A stretch of DNA of 64,000 nucleotides from Trichosphaerium sp. ATCC 40318 (lineage: Eukaryota > Protista > Tubulinea). The notes under the pieces are model-generated. The model was not told where the DNA came from. It did not search any database and saw only the letters and a program-made list of their open reading frames with translations. The stretch covers positions 186,001 to 250,000 of the forward strand of contig JALMLS010000541.1 in assembly GCA_038496445.1 (NCBI GenBank). The letters run 5' to 3'. The position numbers and the translations under genes are program-made. Positions 19,437 through 30,214 of this stretch are shown piece after piece. Positions within the stretch are counted from its first letter, which is position 1; each line of letters starts with the position of its first letter.

Positions 19437-19509
19437 AGCCCACTGCGAGTTTCGATCTCGCTACCATCTGGTCAAAAGCCAAACGCTCTTCCGATTGAGC
19501 TAAGTGGGC
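19437..19509 (-). tRNA. tRNA-Lys(UUU)-like with G37, copy 3
   Basis: Reverse complement of the same cloverleaf; T-loop ATCGAAA. Confidence 0.85.
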
Positions 19510-19636
19510 TACGAGTTGGTAAAAGATGTATAAACATTGGTCCAATCTAGTATTGAACACAAACAATGTTGAGTTTTATTTTAGCACTAGTCAATATTAG
19601 TATGCGTATTTGCTTCAACACCCTTCTCACCTACTA

Positions 19637-26022: not shown

Positions 26023-29000
26023 ATGACGGAGAACATAAAGGTACAACCAGTTTCGACAGTTTAAAGATTGTATTTTCTCTGAGAGACTTTGTTTTTAAAC
26101 CCTTGAATAGAAGTATCATGTGCTTTGCAGCTTACCACAGCTTGGCTGTTTAAAACTGAAGGAAATGTTTCTAAAGAGATGGCAGAACTCAACCGGACCA
26201 TGGAATCCAAATAGCGCTTCGTTACTAGTGTCGAGTAACCCTGGTTACGTAAAGAAACTCAACAAGACAATGAAGAAACTTCTCAAAGATGGCACGCGAT
26301 ATGTCTCTTCTTAACGATTATTCTATAACACATACTGTAGGCAATATTTCAAGTTGGGATATCACTTTGCTTTCGTCTCTTCTGCTTGAGGAAACTTTAT
26401 GGCCGACAACTGATAAATCAGAGCTCTCTCATCTAGAACCTAGAATACGTGCCGTAAGTGTAGTTATCACGTGTTTGCGAACTGACACTTTTTTTGTAGT
26501 TGAGAGAAGCGAGGAACAGTATATCGCACCTTGGTTCATCTATTTCTAGCTCCGAGTTAGACAATATCAAAAAGGCTATGATTTCCGCGTTACTTGGATT
26601 AGGTGTTGCTCAGTCTGATATTGACAATAGCAACAGAGGTATGTATTGTTGGCAACGCTCGGGTATGTACTAACAAGGTGTAAGGCAACCCTGTTGAAGA
26701 AGATGATAAAACTGCTGAAGAATTAAAATCCAAAGGGAACAACGCTTTTAGACAGAAGAAGTTCAAAGAAGCGATAGAGTTGTACTCTAAAGCAATACAC
26801 GTTCACTGTACTGACTCTCCAAAACAACTTGGTACAATCTATTCAAATAGGTATGCTCACAAGTACTGTTTGAGTTTGTATTAACCGTGGGCAGGAGTTT
26901 GGCATACCTTAAGCTTGGCGCTCATGAAGACGCTCTGAGTGATGCTAAAATAGCTTGCAATCTTAGACCAAGATGGTATAAAGCTCATGCAAGAAAAGCA
27001 GACGCCTATTTTGCCCTCAACCGGTACAACGAAGCATTAAAAGGTATTGTCAAACCTTTATTTTGCTCTTTTCCTAATATGTGCTAGTGTACAACTTTGT
27101 TTTATTCCTTGGTCCTACCATAAGTATTGAAAATGATATCAAAAAGAAGATTGAGCTATGCAGATATAATATTCATGGTAATCATGTGATAAACCGTACA
27201 CTTAAAGAAGAATTACGCCGTGTACTGTTACCGCTCCACCTTTCCTTAAGATATTACTAACTATTTCAAGATGCGCGATGCAGGGATAGATATGTCTCTT
27301 TCAAAAATATTTGACATGTTTCCCGGGGGAGGAATGCCACAATACGTAAAAGGGTTCCTACACAAAGAAGGAGCGGTAAGCAGAATATTTGTTGGGTTCA
27401 TAGTTTCTTACATGTACACAGGAAGGCTACAAACAAAGCTATGAGCTTGCTGTTAATGAATGGATGATTGGTGGTCGTTTAGGCCATCCCGGATGCTTAT
27501 ACGAGCTGGTGCAGTAAGCAAAAGCGTATTTCTTTCTCAAGGCTTTTTGTAGGCTGTCATGTTCAAAGAAGGTATGGGCGTTGCCCAGGACTTTAAGCTA
27601 TCGATTAGATACCTTAAAAAAGGTCTTGAGTGTTGTGATACAATGGACGATGACGATTCTGACAAGAACCTTTTTATCGGTCTTTTATGTCATTCTCTTG
27701 CACATGCATATGATATTGGTATAGGTGTACCTAAAAACTTTACAAAAGCTCTAGTGTACTATAAACGTGCGATAGTACATGAATTTCCATGTGCGTTTTA
27801 ACCAAAGAGAAACATGTATCTGGCATGTATTGACTTATTTGTTACCAGCGTCATTTGTCAACTTGGGTGCCGCATATTTGCAAGGTAATAGTGTTTTAAA
27901 ACCAGATCGAAACAAAGCCTTTGACCTTTTTAAGACTGCAGCATCATACGGTACAGAAAGAAGAAAATGGTACCATAAGTTTTCTCACATTTTTCTTGTA
28001 GGAGAGTATAATGGGATGCTGAACCTTGCTCGATGCTACCTTCACGGTATTGGAGTAGCTTCGAATTTTAAGCTTGCAAAGTTATGGTAATATACACAAC
28101 CAAAATTGTAGACTGTACTAACTAAAATACATAGGTATACTCATGCTTCTGATGCTGGTTTTGCTGAAGCTAAAATTGAAATGGCAAAGTTGGATTTTGA
28201 TAAGATGATTGCTGAGGAAGAAGAGACTCTTAGAGCTTTATCAGACTTCGAAAAACACTATGGCGTTGTTCCTGATGATACAAAAGATTCTGAGAGTAGA
28301 ATAGAGAGAGTAATGAAGGAGATGATGAAGGAAGAGATAGGTGAAGAAGGAGAAAAAGTAGCCGACATGTTGAAACAGTTTAATCGGGATTCTAAAAAAC
28401 CAATAAGCTCCAAAGGCGGATTTAGCATTGATATCACTTCAGAGGTACCTCAGTTCTATTATAATCTATTAAAGATTCCTTAAGGATCTGGAACCGTATC
28501 TAAAGGTTTCCCCAGTTGTTCAAAACTACTACTATGGTCTTAAGTGTAACGAAGAAGCGTTTGTTCTACTACTTTCAGGACATCATCACGCAGCAATTTC
28601 TCGCTATGCTGAGAGCCTAAAAGTAGATACCATCTGTTTTCGCATACCTCATTCGTTAGAAAATGACCTTCAGAACGCCGCTGATTCTGAACTACGAATA
28701 TCCAAAGGCCAGTCTGTTGATGCTCTGATTGTAAAGTACAAAGTAAATTGTTCAAACTGTTAGACACTAACAAACTGCCATAAGGCTACATCTCACTCAG
28801 TTTGATTCAAACTGGGACAATACCGTAGAGTACGCCAAAAAGTGTCATGGTAAGTTGCATAAGAGAATTGAAATTTGGCTGACATTTAGTATTACAGAAC
28901 TACATCCAAACGAAGAGTATTTTCCTTTTGTTATTGGAACTTGCCTGTTGTTCCAACAAAAATACAAACAGGTTATACCATGGGGTAAAGATATGCTAAA

Positions 29001-30214
29001 GGTACATCTTATAACTCAAACATATTAGCTAATTAAGGAATTTAGAAGCAACCCAAGAATGCACCACTACTGCATTTCGTGGCAAGAGCAATTCTTGTAG
29101 ATCAAATTGCAAGTTGTTCGAACATTTACGCTTCTTGGCATGATCCTAAGCTTGTCGAAGCACGTGAATACTACAAATCATTTATCAAAACACTTGACTA
29201 CCATGCACGTGATCATCCAAAAGGTAAGGTATTGAGTTATTAATACAGTTTTAAACATGTTTTTGTAGTGTTGTATGACTTAGGATTCATTGAGATTTTA
29301 CTTGGCAATGAAGAAAAAGCGCGTGCTCTATTGAACAAAGCAGAAAGAGTAGAATCAGATTTATTACCATTCTTCCCTCGCAAGACATACTCAATGAAGA
29401 ATCCACTTAAGATACTACTCACCACAAAAAAACATAGCAAAGCTTCAAATAAGAGGACAAAAAAGGAAAACTCAGGCAAAACAAAACAATCACGTGATAC
29501 GCCACAAAAATCGGTATCTGTCAAAACTTTTGCTCCTGTAAAATCTAGTACGGTATTCTTTTGCCTTCTCACCTAATTGGTTTCCCTTATCTAGAAATGC
29601 TATTGGCAACACTCACTGATCGCTATACAGACCTACAAGAAAATTGGGAGCGGCTGTCCAAGTCAGGGGAGAGAGTTCGCCGACAAACATTTGAACCTAG
29701 GCTTGCTGTACGTTACGTAATGTTGTCTCATTGTTGAGAATTTTCTTTAGCCTCTATCTGATCCACCAAGTAAGAATAGCTGCAAACCGATATTCATCCA
29801 CGAGATGCTTCCGAACAAGGACAAGATATACCCTGGAAGGTCACGTTTTCCATTTTGAGCTTCTATTTTGGTTATTTCTCTCCCTAACGCTATTCTTAGG
29901 TTTATCTACCTTGAGTTAATGTTTGCTCCTGTCAAAATAGTAGCAGTATCTACTTTCGCTAAAGACCAACGCGGTGACTTGATTTGTATTTTTGTCTACA
30001 ACTTTCCAAACTCACCTGCATCTATCAAAAGGAGGTTTATAAAAGGACAAAGATTCAAAGTGTATAATCCTTACTATAGAGTTACTATATCTGGACACGC
30101 TGGTATACGGTACTGTAGAATGGTTGATAGCCATAAGCCACGAATTAAACGAACCAAGGTATTAACTTCTACATGTTTAGAATTGATGACTTGAGGTGTC
30201 TCGAATGGGAATAA
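26023..30214 (+). CDS. HEPN (DZIP3-like) + TPR + SEL1 + OB-like protein, copy B (frame intact; basic tail cut by GAA>TAA)
   Basis: Same exon structure as copy A; LREARNSISH at 26500-26529; ends RIDDLRCLEWE*. Confidence 0.85.

What the first reader, a model, noticed from the sequence alone, without database searches (positions are those of the whole stretch)
19437..30214. Candidate protist immune module: HEPN RNase-TPR-SEL1-OB protein head-to-head with a G37 tRNA-Lys(UUU)
Seen: two multi-exon paralogues whose spliced N-terminus reads WDITLLSSLLL...LREARNSISH...ISSSELDNI...ALLGLGV, followed by TPR, SEL1 repeats and a C-terminal beta domain. In both copies a tRNA-Lys(UUU) with G37 lies divergently, 127 bp from the ATG. 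The ORF track misses the RNSISH motif because its exon is translated there in another frame. Known: this pattern resembles the DZIP3-type HEPN domain with an R-x4-H RNase motif, which in invertebrates is fused to NACHT/TPR proteins. The bacterial HEPN anticodon nuclease PrrC cleaves tRNA-Lys(UUU), and its activity depends on anticodon-loop modifications. Inference: a sensor-gated RNase effector travelling with a variant tRNA that could be nuclease-resistant, a decoy or a regulator. Co-duplication alone could also explain the linkage.
Basis: partly seen in the sequence, partly recalled or inferred. Interest (0 to 1): 0.88.

Follow-up and report, generated by a model that had tools for sequence, protein, structure and literature searches.

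The report
HEPN-like TPR–Sel1 genes beside tRNA-Lys cluster
Two tandem copies of an intron-rich gene for a probable HEPN-type RNase domain fused to chaperone-binding-type TPR and Sel1 repeats are real, but they sit next to a tRNA-Lys gene only because the tRNA and the gene were duplicated together inside a local cluster of five identical-type tRNA genes, so there is no sign of a nuclease–tRNA partnership.

Summary
The sequence features are largely there. Two paralogous multi-exon genes share a 4.6-kb duplicated unit at 77% identity. Each has a tRNA-Lys(UUU) with G37 lying divergently 127 bp from the proposed ATG.

Copy B's spliced N-terminus carries WDITLL and an R-x4-H motif (RNSISH). Its only Pfam matches are three HEPN families (best E 7e-4 to 2e-3), all below the curated cut-offs. 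TPR and Sel1 are confirmed. The TPR is Hop-TPR1-like with the carboxylate-clamp residues. The C-terminal domain is β-rich, but an OB fold was not shown.

Three results undercut the "module" reading:
- The window holds five near-identical G37 tRNA-Lys units. Three are not beside a HEPN gene, and two of those travel with an F-box/LamG gene.
- The tRNA and the gene lie in one duplication unit, so the two adjacencies count as one event.
- Copy A's HEPN exons carry two frame-breaking deletions, and the tRNA beside the intact copy B is the most degenerate of the five.

dN/dS is 0.22, which is not immune-like. No relatives were found in any database searched.

Verdict: a lineage-specific HEPN-like–TPR–Sel1 gene pair, with the tRNA linkage explained by co-duplication. 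The scan separately noted the five G37 tRNAs of this same window (s1-372847). It holds no other HEPN–Sel1 note for this genome.

The parts
19437..19509 (-). tRNA-Lys(UUU) tK3 with G37, A54/A60 T-loop and U73. It is divergent from gene A.
   Evidence: ARAGORN; Rfam 60.5 bits.
19637..23926 (+). Gene A, paralogue of gene B. Its HEPN-coding exons are broken by a 2-nt deletion at 19919/19920 and a 1-nt deletion at 20187/20188 relative to B. Downstream exons are intact. The last exon (23815-23926) encodes a K/R-rich tail.
   Evidence: Alignments; translations; last exon.
24407..24479 (-). tRNA-Lys(UUU) tK4 with G37. It lies 3' of an F-box/LamG ORF and is not beside a HEPN gene start.
24626..25390 (-). 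F-box + Laminin_G_3 ORF. Together with tK4 it is an inverted 96% copy of 6751-7804.
   Evidence: I1, I2. Pfam on the twin ORF.
25823..25895 (-). tRNA-Lys(UUU) tK5 with G37, divergent from gene B. It carries two D-stem changes (A23G, C25G) and has the lowest score of the five.
   Evidence: 47.9 bits.
26023..30214 (+). Gene B, about 23 exons and about 1070 aa. Exon 1 is 26023-26040 (unverified). The next exons are 26111-26248, 26289-26453, 26500-26638, 26685-26850, 26895-27043, 27088-27221, 27271-27375, 27422-27508, 27553-27790, 27849-27950, 28002-28086, 28135-28444 and one starting at 28485. The 3' exons end at 29547, span 29595-29707, and start at 29751. The last exon is 30181-30214. The introns set here by hand or by RNA are 40-58 nt, all GT..AG.
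   Evidence: Hand curation; RNA junctions.
26289..26638 (+). HEPN-like region (exons 3 and 4). WDITLL is in exon 3. The R-x4-H motif RNSISH is at 26512-26529 in exon 4.
   Evidence: Pfam sub-threshold HEPN hits; Atlas.
26685..27221 (+). Three-TPR domain of the Hsp70/Hsp90 co-chaperone (Hop TPR1) type. The residues equivalent to clamp positions K8, N12, N43, K73 and R77 are present.
   Evidence: Pfam; PDB matches (HOP TPR1 1elw, STIP1, RPAP3, SGT, PP5, Tom70).
27422..28170 (+). Sel1 repeat region with at least 4 repeats.
   Evidence: Pfam Sel1 at 35.7 and 36.1 bits, cut-off 30.7.
29751..30214 (+). C-terminal beta-rich domain, fold not established. In B a TAA follows ...LEWE, which removes the basic tail kept in A and in relic Z.
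   Evidence: No Pfam hit.
17414..17635 (.). Relic of a third gene copy. The last exon lies on the + strand (17414-17535, 91% to A). It is followed by an inverted piece of the beta-domain exon (17532-17635).
   Evidence: (D12).
1575..1647 (+). tRNA-Lys(UUU) tK1 with G37. No HEPN gene is adjacent.
7687..7759 (+). tRNA-Lys(UUU) tK2 with G37, lying 3' of the F-box/LamG ORF 6751-7512.

Best explanation
A lineage-specific gene was tandemly duplicated together with the tRNA-Lys(UUU) gene upstream of it. A rearranged relic of a third copy also remains.

The gene encodes, in order:
- an N-terminal HEPN-like domain with an intact R-N-x3-H motif (copy B only);
- a Hop-TPR1-like three-TPR domain with carboxylate-clamp residues;
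- at least four Sel1 repeats;
- an acidic helical linker and further TPR-like helices;
- a K/S-rich linker;
- a beta-rich C-terminal domain.

The locus lies inside a local cluster of five near-identical tRNA-Lys(UUU) gene units. These units have been copied with different neighbours. The head-to-head tRNA is therefore a by-product of co-duplication in a compact genome, not a functional partner.

All five tRNAs carry G37, and AAA is the main Lys codon in the window's genes. This tRNA is therefore most likely the organism's ordinary tRNA-Lys(UUU) (inferred).

Inferred mechanism of the protein, not shown here: a metal-independent HEPN endoRNase or RNA-binding head is positioned or gated by its repeat scaffold. 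The clamp-type TPR probably docks on EEVD-type C-termini of Hsp70/Hsp90 or a similar acidic peptide. This is the same logic as the HEPN-TPR fusions of animals and Capsaspora, and of sacsin.

Copy A is probably losing its HEPN head.
For: Duplication unit and tRNA spread:
- The duplication unit is 19347-23898 against 25724-30262, at 77% over 4.6 kb, and it includes both the tRNA and the gene.
- Five tRNA-Lys(UUU) genes all carry G37. They share flanks from about -50 to about +90 and fall into two flank subfamilies.
- tK2 and tK4 travel with an F-box/LamG ORF as a 1.05-kb inverted repeat at 96% identity.
- tK1 has neither neighbour.

HEPN evidence:
- The motif RNSISH is present, with the polar N after R. 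This is as described for HEPN in PMC3710099.
- The top three Pfam matches of the spliced N-terminus are all HEPN families: Swt1 E 1.9e-3 and 6.8e-4, DZIP3 0.033, MAE_28990 0.041.
- Twenty other pieces of the gene gave no HEPN hit.
- In the Atlas search, named hits to the motif exon were dominated by HEPN_Swt1 and HEPN_DZIP3 clusters.

Repeat domains:
- TPR and Sel1 hits.
- The best natural PDB matches are HOP TPR1, STIP1, RPAP3, SGT, PP5 and Tom70. The equivalents of K73 and R77 align.

State of the two copies:
- dN/dS is 0.22 over 406 codons.
- Copy A carries frameshifts.
- tK5 has a weakened D stem.
- AAA outnumbers AAG, 105 to 58.
- RNA contigs confirm two splice junctions of B.
Against: - The HEPN assignment rests on sub-threshold profile hits (18.9-20.3 bits against a cut-off of 27.5) and on a short motif.
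- No homologue was found anywhere.
- The 5' exon structure has no RNA support. The two deletions in copy A could be assembly errors, since both lie in short repeats.
- Whether G37 is the genome-wide allele could not be tested, because only this window was available.
- Five copies of one cluster are not independent samples.
- EEVD binding is inferred only from conserved clamp residues.
Confidence: 0.62

Rival explanations
1. Functional nuclease-tRNA module. The HEPN domain would be an anticodon nuclease acting on tRNA-Lys(UUU). The adjacent G37 tRNA would be a resistant, decoy or regulatory variant kept in linkage.
For: - Both gene copies have the tRNA at the same 127-nt distance.
- The bacterial HEPN nucleases PrrC and RloC cleave tRNA-Lys (PMC3710099).
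- G37 is unusual for a UUU anticodon.
Against: - The two adjacencies are one duplication event.
- Three of the five G37 tRNAs are not next to a HEPN gene.
- The intact gene B is paired with the most degenerate tRNA. The frameshifted gene A is paired with the consensus tRNA.
- The PrrC hallmarks are absent. No ABC ATPase was hit by any piece, and the gene is eukaryotic, so there is no restriction-modification operon.
- AAA is the main Lys codon, so a UUU tRNA is needed for ordinary translation.
Confidence: 0.04
2. The N-terminal domain is a HEPN fold but is non-catalytic or purely RNA- or nucleotide-binding. In that case the protein is mainly an Hsp70/Hsp90 co-chaperone-type adaptor, a sacsin-like pairing of HEPN with chaperone modules. 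It would not be a defence effector.
For: - The TPR is clamp-type and closest to HOP TPR1 and other co-chaperones.
- Purifying selection, dN/dS 0.22.
- Only two copies and no immune-type domains.
- HEPN domains without activity are known (PMC3710099).
Against: - The R-N-x3-H motif is fully intact in copy B. According to PMC3710099 this predicts RNase activity.
- No experimental data exist either way.
Confidence: 0.22
3. The N-terminus is not a HEPN domain at all. RNSISH would be a chance R-x4-H in a lineage-specific helical region.
For: - All HEPN profile scores are below Pfam's curated cut-offs.
- The single exons gave no hit.
- phmmer of exon 3 against 1.84 billion representatives found only two spurious repeat proteins.
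- Atlas scores were 0.8 or lower for HEPN clusters, which makes them leads only.
Against: - E-values of 7e-4 to 2e-3 are already corrected for the whole library.
- In one search the only three families reported all belong to HEPN.
- The matches cover the right part of each profile, ending at the motif-bearing helix.
- An independent language-model search points to the same superfamily.
Confidence: 0.12

Closest known systems
DZIP3/hRUL138-type HEPN proteins (Pfam PF18738) of animals and Capsaspora
   Same: An N-terminal HEPN with an R-N-x3-H motif is fused to TPR repeats, and the genes are lineage-specific and tandemly duplicated. Fusion to TPR and expansions in Nematostella, oyster and Capsaspora are described in PMC3710099. 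The FDxTLL-like WDITLL segment precedes the motif (this resemblance is my recollection of the family, not a test).
   Different: The profile score is 14.4 bits against a cut-off of 27. There is no NACHT, Death, CARD, RING or ankyrin domain. Instead there are a clamp-type TPR, Sel1 repeats and a beta-rich C-terminus. Only two copies plus a relic were seen, and selection is purifying rather than a large diversifying expansion.
Swt1-like HEPN (Pfam PF18731), including the bacterial-type active versions found in dictyostelids, Naegleria and Daphnia
   Same: It is the best-scoring profile (18.9-20.3 bits, E 7e-4 to 2e-3). Bacterial members of this clade are fused to TPR and STAND modules (PMC3710099).
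   Different: The score is below the cut-off of 27.5. There is no PIN domain as in Swt1 and no AAA+ ATPase as in the Ava_2192 type.
PrrC/RloC anticodon nucleases
   Same: They are HEPN superfamily members with an R-x4-6-H active site, and their known substrate is tRNA-Lys(UUU) (PMC3710099).
   Different: They are bacterial, with an ABC-ATPase N-terminal domain and restriction-modification linkage. No sequence match was seen here. Nothing in this locus ties the protein to tRNA other than co-duplicated position.
Hop/STIP1 TPR1 and other Hsp70/Hsp90 co-chaperone TPR domains (RPAP3, SGT, PP5, Tom70)
   Same: The TPR exons match HOP TPR1 residues 43-91 (E 4e-6 to 3.5e-9). The equivalents of K73 and R77 align, and the K-x-K-G-N and Y-S-N-R motifs are present. 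Clamp roles are as in PMC2865030.
   Different: Here the clamp domain sits behind a HEPN-like head and in front of Sel1 repeats. Binding to EEVD was not tested.
Sacsin
   Same: It combines a HEPN domain with chaperone-system modules (PMC3710099 abstract).
   Different: In sacsin the HEPN is C-terminal and sits with DnaJ and Hsp90-like regions. No sequence relationship was shown.

Membership tests
HEPN superfamily | R-x4-6-H motif with a polar residue (N/D/H) right after R | tested here: met
   RNSISH at 26512-26529 in copy B. Criterion from PMC3710099. In copy A the motif is present, but the frame ends 16 residues later.
HEPN superfamily | Profile match at the family's curated threshold | tested here: not met
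   HEPN_Swt1 18.9-20.3 bits (cut-off 27.5), HEPN_DZIP3 13.7-14.4 (27), HEPN_MAE_28990 13.7-14.5 (26.8). E-values run from 7e-4 to 0.07. The hits are significant as a set but sub-threshold.
HEPN superfamily | All-alpha domain of about 100-120 aa, a four-helix up-down bundle | not testable with these tools
The single exons are too short to fold alone.
HEPN superfamily | Second conserved acidic residue upstream, typically E-x3-[KR] | tested here: inconclusive
   EPRIR lies just upstream of the motif. Without family alignments this could be chance.
HEPN_DZIP3 (PF18738) | Match to PF18738 above 27 bits | tested here: not met
   14.4 bits, profile positions 36-130 of 144. It scores below the Swt1 profile.
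PrrC/RloC-type anticodon nuclease system | ABC-ATPase regulatory domain fused to the HEPN | tested here: not met
   No ATPase family was hit by any of 20 exon pieces covering the gene.
PrrC/RloC-type anticodon nuclease system | Cleavage of the tRNA-Lys anticodon loop | not testable with these tools
   Needs biochemistry.
Nuclease plus cognate-tRNA linked module (proposed) | Linkage recurs in independent family members and is specific to them | tested here: not met
   Both adjacencies lie in one 4.6-kb duplication unit. Three of five G37 tRNAs have other neighbours. No further family member exists in the window or in the databases searched.
Carboxylate-clamp TPR (Hsp70/Hsp90 co-chaperone type) | Clamp residues K, N, N, K, R at the Hop TPR1 positions 8, 12, 43, 73, 77 | tested here: met
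   The alignment to 1elw places K and R at positions 73 and 77. KSKGN and YSNR were read directly from the spliced sequence. The residue numbering is from established knowledge and PMC2865030.
Sel1 repeat (PF08238) | Match above the gathering score | tested here: met
   35.7 and 36.1 bits against 30.7, with two stretches each in two exon pieces.
tRNA (RF00005), Lys(UUU) | Cloverleaf above the gathering score with anticodon UUU | tested here: met
   47.9-60.5 bits against 29. The loop is CUUUUGA. ARAGORN calls Lys(ttt) for all five.
   AlphaFold2 of the 68-aa exon gave six strands, but mean pLDDT was 45 and pTM 0.22. There was no Pfam hit.

The most novel reading that the evidence does not exclude
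The HEPN head is an active anticodon-loop RNase for tRNA-Lys(UUU). The unusual tRNA (G37, initiator-like A54/A60 T-loop, U73) would then have co-evolved with it as a resistant or regulatory substrate, which would be a eukaryotic counterpart of PrrC-type systems. The evidence here does not exclude this, but nothing beyond one co-duplicated adjacency supports it.
Probability: 0.04. Interest if true: 0.85.

Novelty: new variant of a known kind. Interest (0 to 1): 0.3.

Why it matters
If the N-terminal domain is a true HEPN RNase, this would be a HEPN–TPR fusion outside animals and Capsaspora. It would also have a domain order not found in the HEPN survey read here: a HEPN head, a chaperone-docking-type TPR, Sel1 repeats and a beta domain. 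That hints at an RNase placed or gated by Hsp70/Hsp90, or by peptide ligands.

The more striking claim, a nuclease kept with its own resistant tRNA, is not supported, so the finding should not be carried forward as an immune module.

The tRNA-Lys(UUU) family itself remains unusual and deserves its own genome-wide check. It has G37, an initiator-like A54/A60 T-loop, U73, no nearby T-run and a conserved 3' trailer.

Tried and rejected
- **Automatic gene model.** A dynamic-programming splice model chose wrong introns. I replaced it with hand curation against the A/B alignment and the RNA junctions.
- **Alternative 5' structures.**
  - Reading through to ...KKLLKDGTRY and then joining to GNISSW needs a non-canonical intron, and it did not improve the HEPN scores.
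  - A 105-nt intron that would hide copy A's 2-nt deletion lies outside the 40-58-nt range of the 13 introns set by hand or by RNA.
  - Both alternatives were rejected in favour of the 40-nt GT..AG intron 26249-26288.
- **Pfam on single exons.** Exons 2, 3 and 4 alone gave nothing.
- **Atlas search with exon 3.** Uninformative.
- **phmmer of exon 3 against 1.84 billion representatives.** Two hits, both low-complexity repeat proteins and spurious.
- **Word-indexed search with exon 13.** No hit.
- **tRNA pattern with N at position 37.** No match in metagenome or viral contigs.
- **Protein-based scan of metagenome contigs with the C-terminal exon.** No relative.
- **Exact look-up of the F-box ORF.** Not on record, so the organism stays unidentified.
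- **Structure prediction.**
I did not send it to any other tool afterwards.
  - The C-terminal exon gave low confidence, so I made no fold search.
- **3' trailer hairpin of the tRNA units.** No covariation.
- **Earlier scan notes.** Searching them for A37 or other tRNA-Lys alleles gave only titles and was not informative.

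
Full report
**What is in the sequence**

ARAGORN finds five tRNA-Lys(UUU) genes in the window, not two: 1575-1647 (+), 7687-7759 (+), 19437-19509 (-), 24407-24479 (-) and 25823-25895 (-). 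Rfam confirms all five. Four score 60.4-60.5 bits and the last scores 47.9 bits, against a gathering score of 29.

The alignment to the Rfam tRNA model shows a normal cloverleaf with a seven-base anticodon loop CUUUUGA, so position 37 is G. The same alignment shows a T-loop AUCGAAA (A54 and A60) and a U discriminator. From general knowledge, A54/A60 is the pattern of eukaryotic initiator tRNA.

All five copies share these features. They differ only as follows:
- G57A in the two plus-strand copies.
- C17U in the copy at 24407.
- Two changes in the 3' strand of the D stem (A23G, C25G) in the copy at 25823. This explains its lower score.

**The two genes**

The region 19347-23898 matches 25724-30262 at 77% identity over 4.6 kb. 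The alignment alternates between conserved blocks and short, indel-rich blocks bounded by GT..AG.

I curated copy B by hand:
- Exon 1 is 26023-26040 (unverified).
- The next exons are 26111-26248, 26289-26453, 26500-26638, 26685-26850, 26895-27043, 27088-27221, 27271-27375, 27422-27508, 27553-27790, 27849-27950, 28002-28086 and 28135-28444.
- Another exon starts at 28485, and several 3' exons follow.
- The last exon is 30181-30214.

The 13 introns fixed by hand or by RNA are 40-58 nt, all GT..AG.

One small public RNA run holds two contigs of the 3' part. They show the junctions 29547/29595 and 29707/29751 and an uninterrupted stretch 29905-30060. Copy B is therefore transcribed and spliced there. 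There is no RNA evidence for the 5' exons.

**Check of the observation**

In copy B, joining exons 3 and 4 gives ...GNISSWDITLLSSLLLEETLW...EPRIRA|LREARNSISHLGSSISSSELDNIKKAMISALLGLGV.... The ATGs at 19637 and 26023 are 127 nt from the tRNA 5' ends.

Copy A differs from B by two deletions, and these are the only net frame-breaking differences over all the exons compared:
- A 2-nt deletion in exon 3, after MARDMS.
- A 1-nt deletion in exon 4, after ...DNIKK.

Translated directly, copy A reads MARDMSS-stop and LREARNSISHLGSSISSSELDNIKKL-stop.

An alternative 105-nt intron would hide the first deletion. It lies outside the 40-58-nt intron range, so I prefer the 40-nt intron. The second deletion cannot be avoided. 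Unless these are assembly errors, copy A no longer encodes the HEPN-like domain.

**Domains**

By reference, the exon pieces give the following:
- TPR_1/TPR_2/TPR_BSK1_C in exons 5-6.
- Sel1 above the gathering score in exons 10-12 (35.7 and 36.1 bits against 30.7, with two stretches each).
- A weak TPR_2 hit further downstream.

The best natural PDB matches of the TPR pieces are all Hsp70/Hsp90 co-chaperone TPR domains: HOP/STIP1 TPR1, RPAP3, SPAG1, SGT, PP5, Tom70 and CNS1.
- The alignment to HOP TPR1 puts a K and an R of the query at chain positions 73 and 77.
- KSKGN and YSNR supply the other three clamp positions.
- The clamp concept is as described in PMC2865030.

The repeat scaffold therefore begins with a carboxylate-clamp-type TPR.

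The C-terminal exon has no Pfam hit. Its AlphaFold2 model is all-beta but unreliable (pLDDT 45). I can confirm 'beta-rich', but not an OB fold.

**Is the N-terminus a HEPN domain?**

- The single exons gave no Pfam hit.
- The spliced 102-residue N-terminus was copied from the output. It gave exactly three families, all HEPN: HEPN_Swt1 (E 1.9e-3, 18.9 bits), HEPN_DZIP3 (E 0.033, 14.4 bits, profile 36-130 of 144) and HEPN_MAE_28990 (E 0.041).
- A variant with the upstream frame read through gave the same three HEPN families plus one unrelated weak hit (ACP_syn_III_C, E 0.069). Swt1 was at E 6.8e-4.
- None reaches Pfam's curated cut-off (about 27 bits).
- Twenty other pieces of the gene never hit a HEPN family.
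- A language-model search with the 46-residue motif exon returned mostly HEPN_Swt1, HEPN_DZIP3 and other HEPN-family clusters (Csm6, RiboL-PSP/MAE_28990) among named clusters. Scores were 0.8 or lower, so these are leads only.
- The motif R-N-S-I-S-H fits the superfamily rule of R-x4-6-H with N, D or H after the R (PMC3710099).

I put superfamily membership at about 85%. Membership in the DZIP3 family specifically was tested and not met.

A structure test was impossible.

**The tRNA linkage**

The tRNA and the gene lie in the same 4.6-kb duplication unit. The two head-to-head pairs are therefore one evolutionary event.

The tRNA unit is conserved from roughly -50 to +90 around the gene, including a nearly invariant 45-nt 3' trailer. 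It also occurs in three other contexts:
- Twice 3' of an F-box + Laminin_G_3 ORF. This forms a 1.05-kb unit present as an inverted repeat at 96% identity (6751-7804 against 24362-25390).
- Once alone, at 1575.

G37 is in all five copies, so it is not a property of the copies beside the HEPN genes.

The pairing also runs against co-adaptation. The intact gene B sits beside the tRNA with the damaged D stem. The frameshifted gene A sits beside the consensus tRNA.

AAA is the main lysine codon in the window's genes (105 AAA against 58 AAG). A UUU-anticodon tRNA is therefore needed for normal translation, and this five-copy family is the obvious candidate.

No other family member is in the window. 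The only other trace is a rearranged relic: a last exon at 17414-17535 plus an inverted fragment at 17532-17635.

**Evolution of the pair**

- Exons 2-5 and their introns are 95-99% identical between A and B, while the rest is 75-87%. A recent gene-conversion tract therefore covers the HEPN and first TPR exons.
- Over 406 codons outside that tract, dN/dS is 0.22 with dS about 0.7. Both copies were under purifying selection for most of their history, unlike fast-diversifying immune receptors.
- B has a TAA right after ...LEWE in the last exon. This removes a K/R-rich tail that A and the relic keep.

**Searches for relatives**

- phmmer of exon 3 against 1.84 billion representative proteins gave only two repeat-protein artefacts.
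- Exon 13 had no hit in the word-indexed search.
- The C-terminal exon had no relative in metagenome contigs.
- The tRNA pattern with N at position 37 had no match in metagenome or viral contigs.
- An exact look-up of a neighbouring ORF found nothing.

The organism is not represented in the collections I could reach, so genome-wide questions stay open.

**Comparison with what is known**

PMC3710099 describes the following:
- DZIP3/hRUL138-type HEPN domains fused to TPR, NACHT, Death and other modules, with lineage-specific expansions in Nematostella, oyster and Capsaspora.
- Bacterial Swt1/Abi2-clade HEPNs fused to STAND-TPR.
- HEPN families fused to, or in operon with, Sel1 proteins.
- Active bacterial-type Swt1-family HEPNs in dictyostelids and Naegleria.

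A HEPN head on a TPR/Sel1 scaffold is thus a known theme. The particular order here does not appear in that survey: a HEPN-like head, a clamp TPR, Sel1 repeats, an acidic linker, TPR-like helices and a beta domain.

PrrC and RloC share only the superfamily and the substrate idea. Their defining ABC-ATPase domain is absent.

**Verdict**

The gene pair is real and is a modestly interesting new variant of the HEPN-repeat-scaffold theme, with one copy apparently decaying. The proposed nuclease-tRNA immune module is not supported, because co-duplication inside a local tRNA-Lys cluster explains the linkage.

The unusual tRNA itself was noted separately by the scan on this same window (s1-372847). 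It is the more puzzling object and needs a genome-wide census.

Noticed in passing
window 1575-1647, 7687-7759, 19437-19509, 24407-24479, 25823-25895: Besides G37, all five tRNA-Lys(UUU) copies have a T-loop AUCGAAA (A54 and A60, the pattern of eukaryotic initiator tRNAs) and a U73 discriminator. There is no run of four or more T within about 100 nt downstream. About 45 nt of 3' trailer is almost invariant and forms a weak hairpin without covariation.
   Followed up: partly
window 6751-7804 and 24362-25390: An F-box + Laminin_G_3 (ConA-like) ORF followed by a tRNA-Lys forms a 1.05-kb unit. It is present twice in inverted orientation at 96% identity, 17 kb apart.
   Followed up: partly
window 17414-17635: A relic of a third copy of the gene. 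Its last exon is 91% identical to copy A's and keeps the K/R-rich tail. An inverted fragment of the beta-domain exon follows it directly.
   Followed up: partly
window 19660-20490 vs 26046-26875: A gene-conversion tract. Exons 2-5 and their introns are 95-99% identical between the paralogues, while the rest of the genes is 75-87% identical.
   Followed up: yes
window 17536-19341 vs 23920-25723: The two segments between homologous anchors of the tandem units have almost the same length (the offset changes only from 6382 to 6377). They show no sequence similarity. One holds an SDR-like gene, the other the tRNA + F-box unit. This is unexplained.
   Followed up: no
window 30203-30214: Copy B has a TAA directly after ...LEWE in the last exon. 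Copy A and the relic read on there into a basic, NLS-like tail.
   Followed up: partly
window 48374-48577 (-): A different Sel1-repeat gene (Sel1 63.7 bits), 31-39% identical to the Sel1 region of gene B.
   Followed up: no
window 9105-10010 (+): A single-exon 301-aa protein made of MORN_2 variant repeats (115.9 bits) with an F-box-like N-terminus by eye.
   Followed up: no
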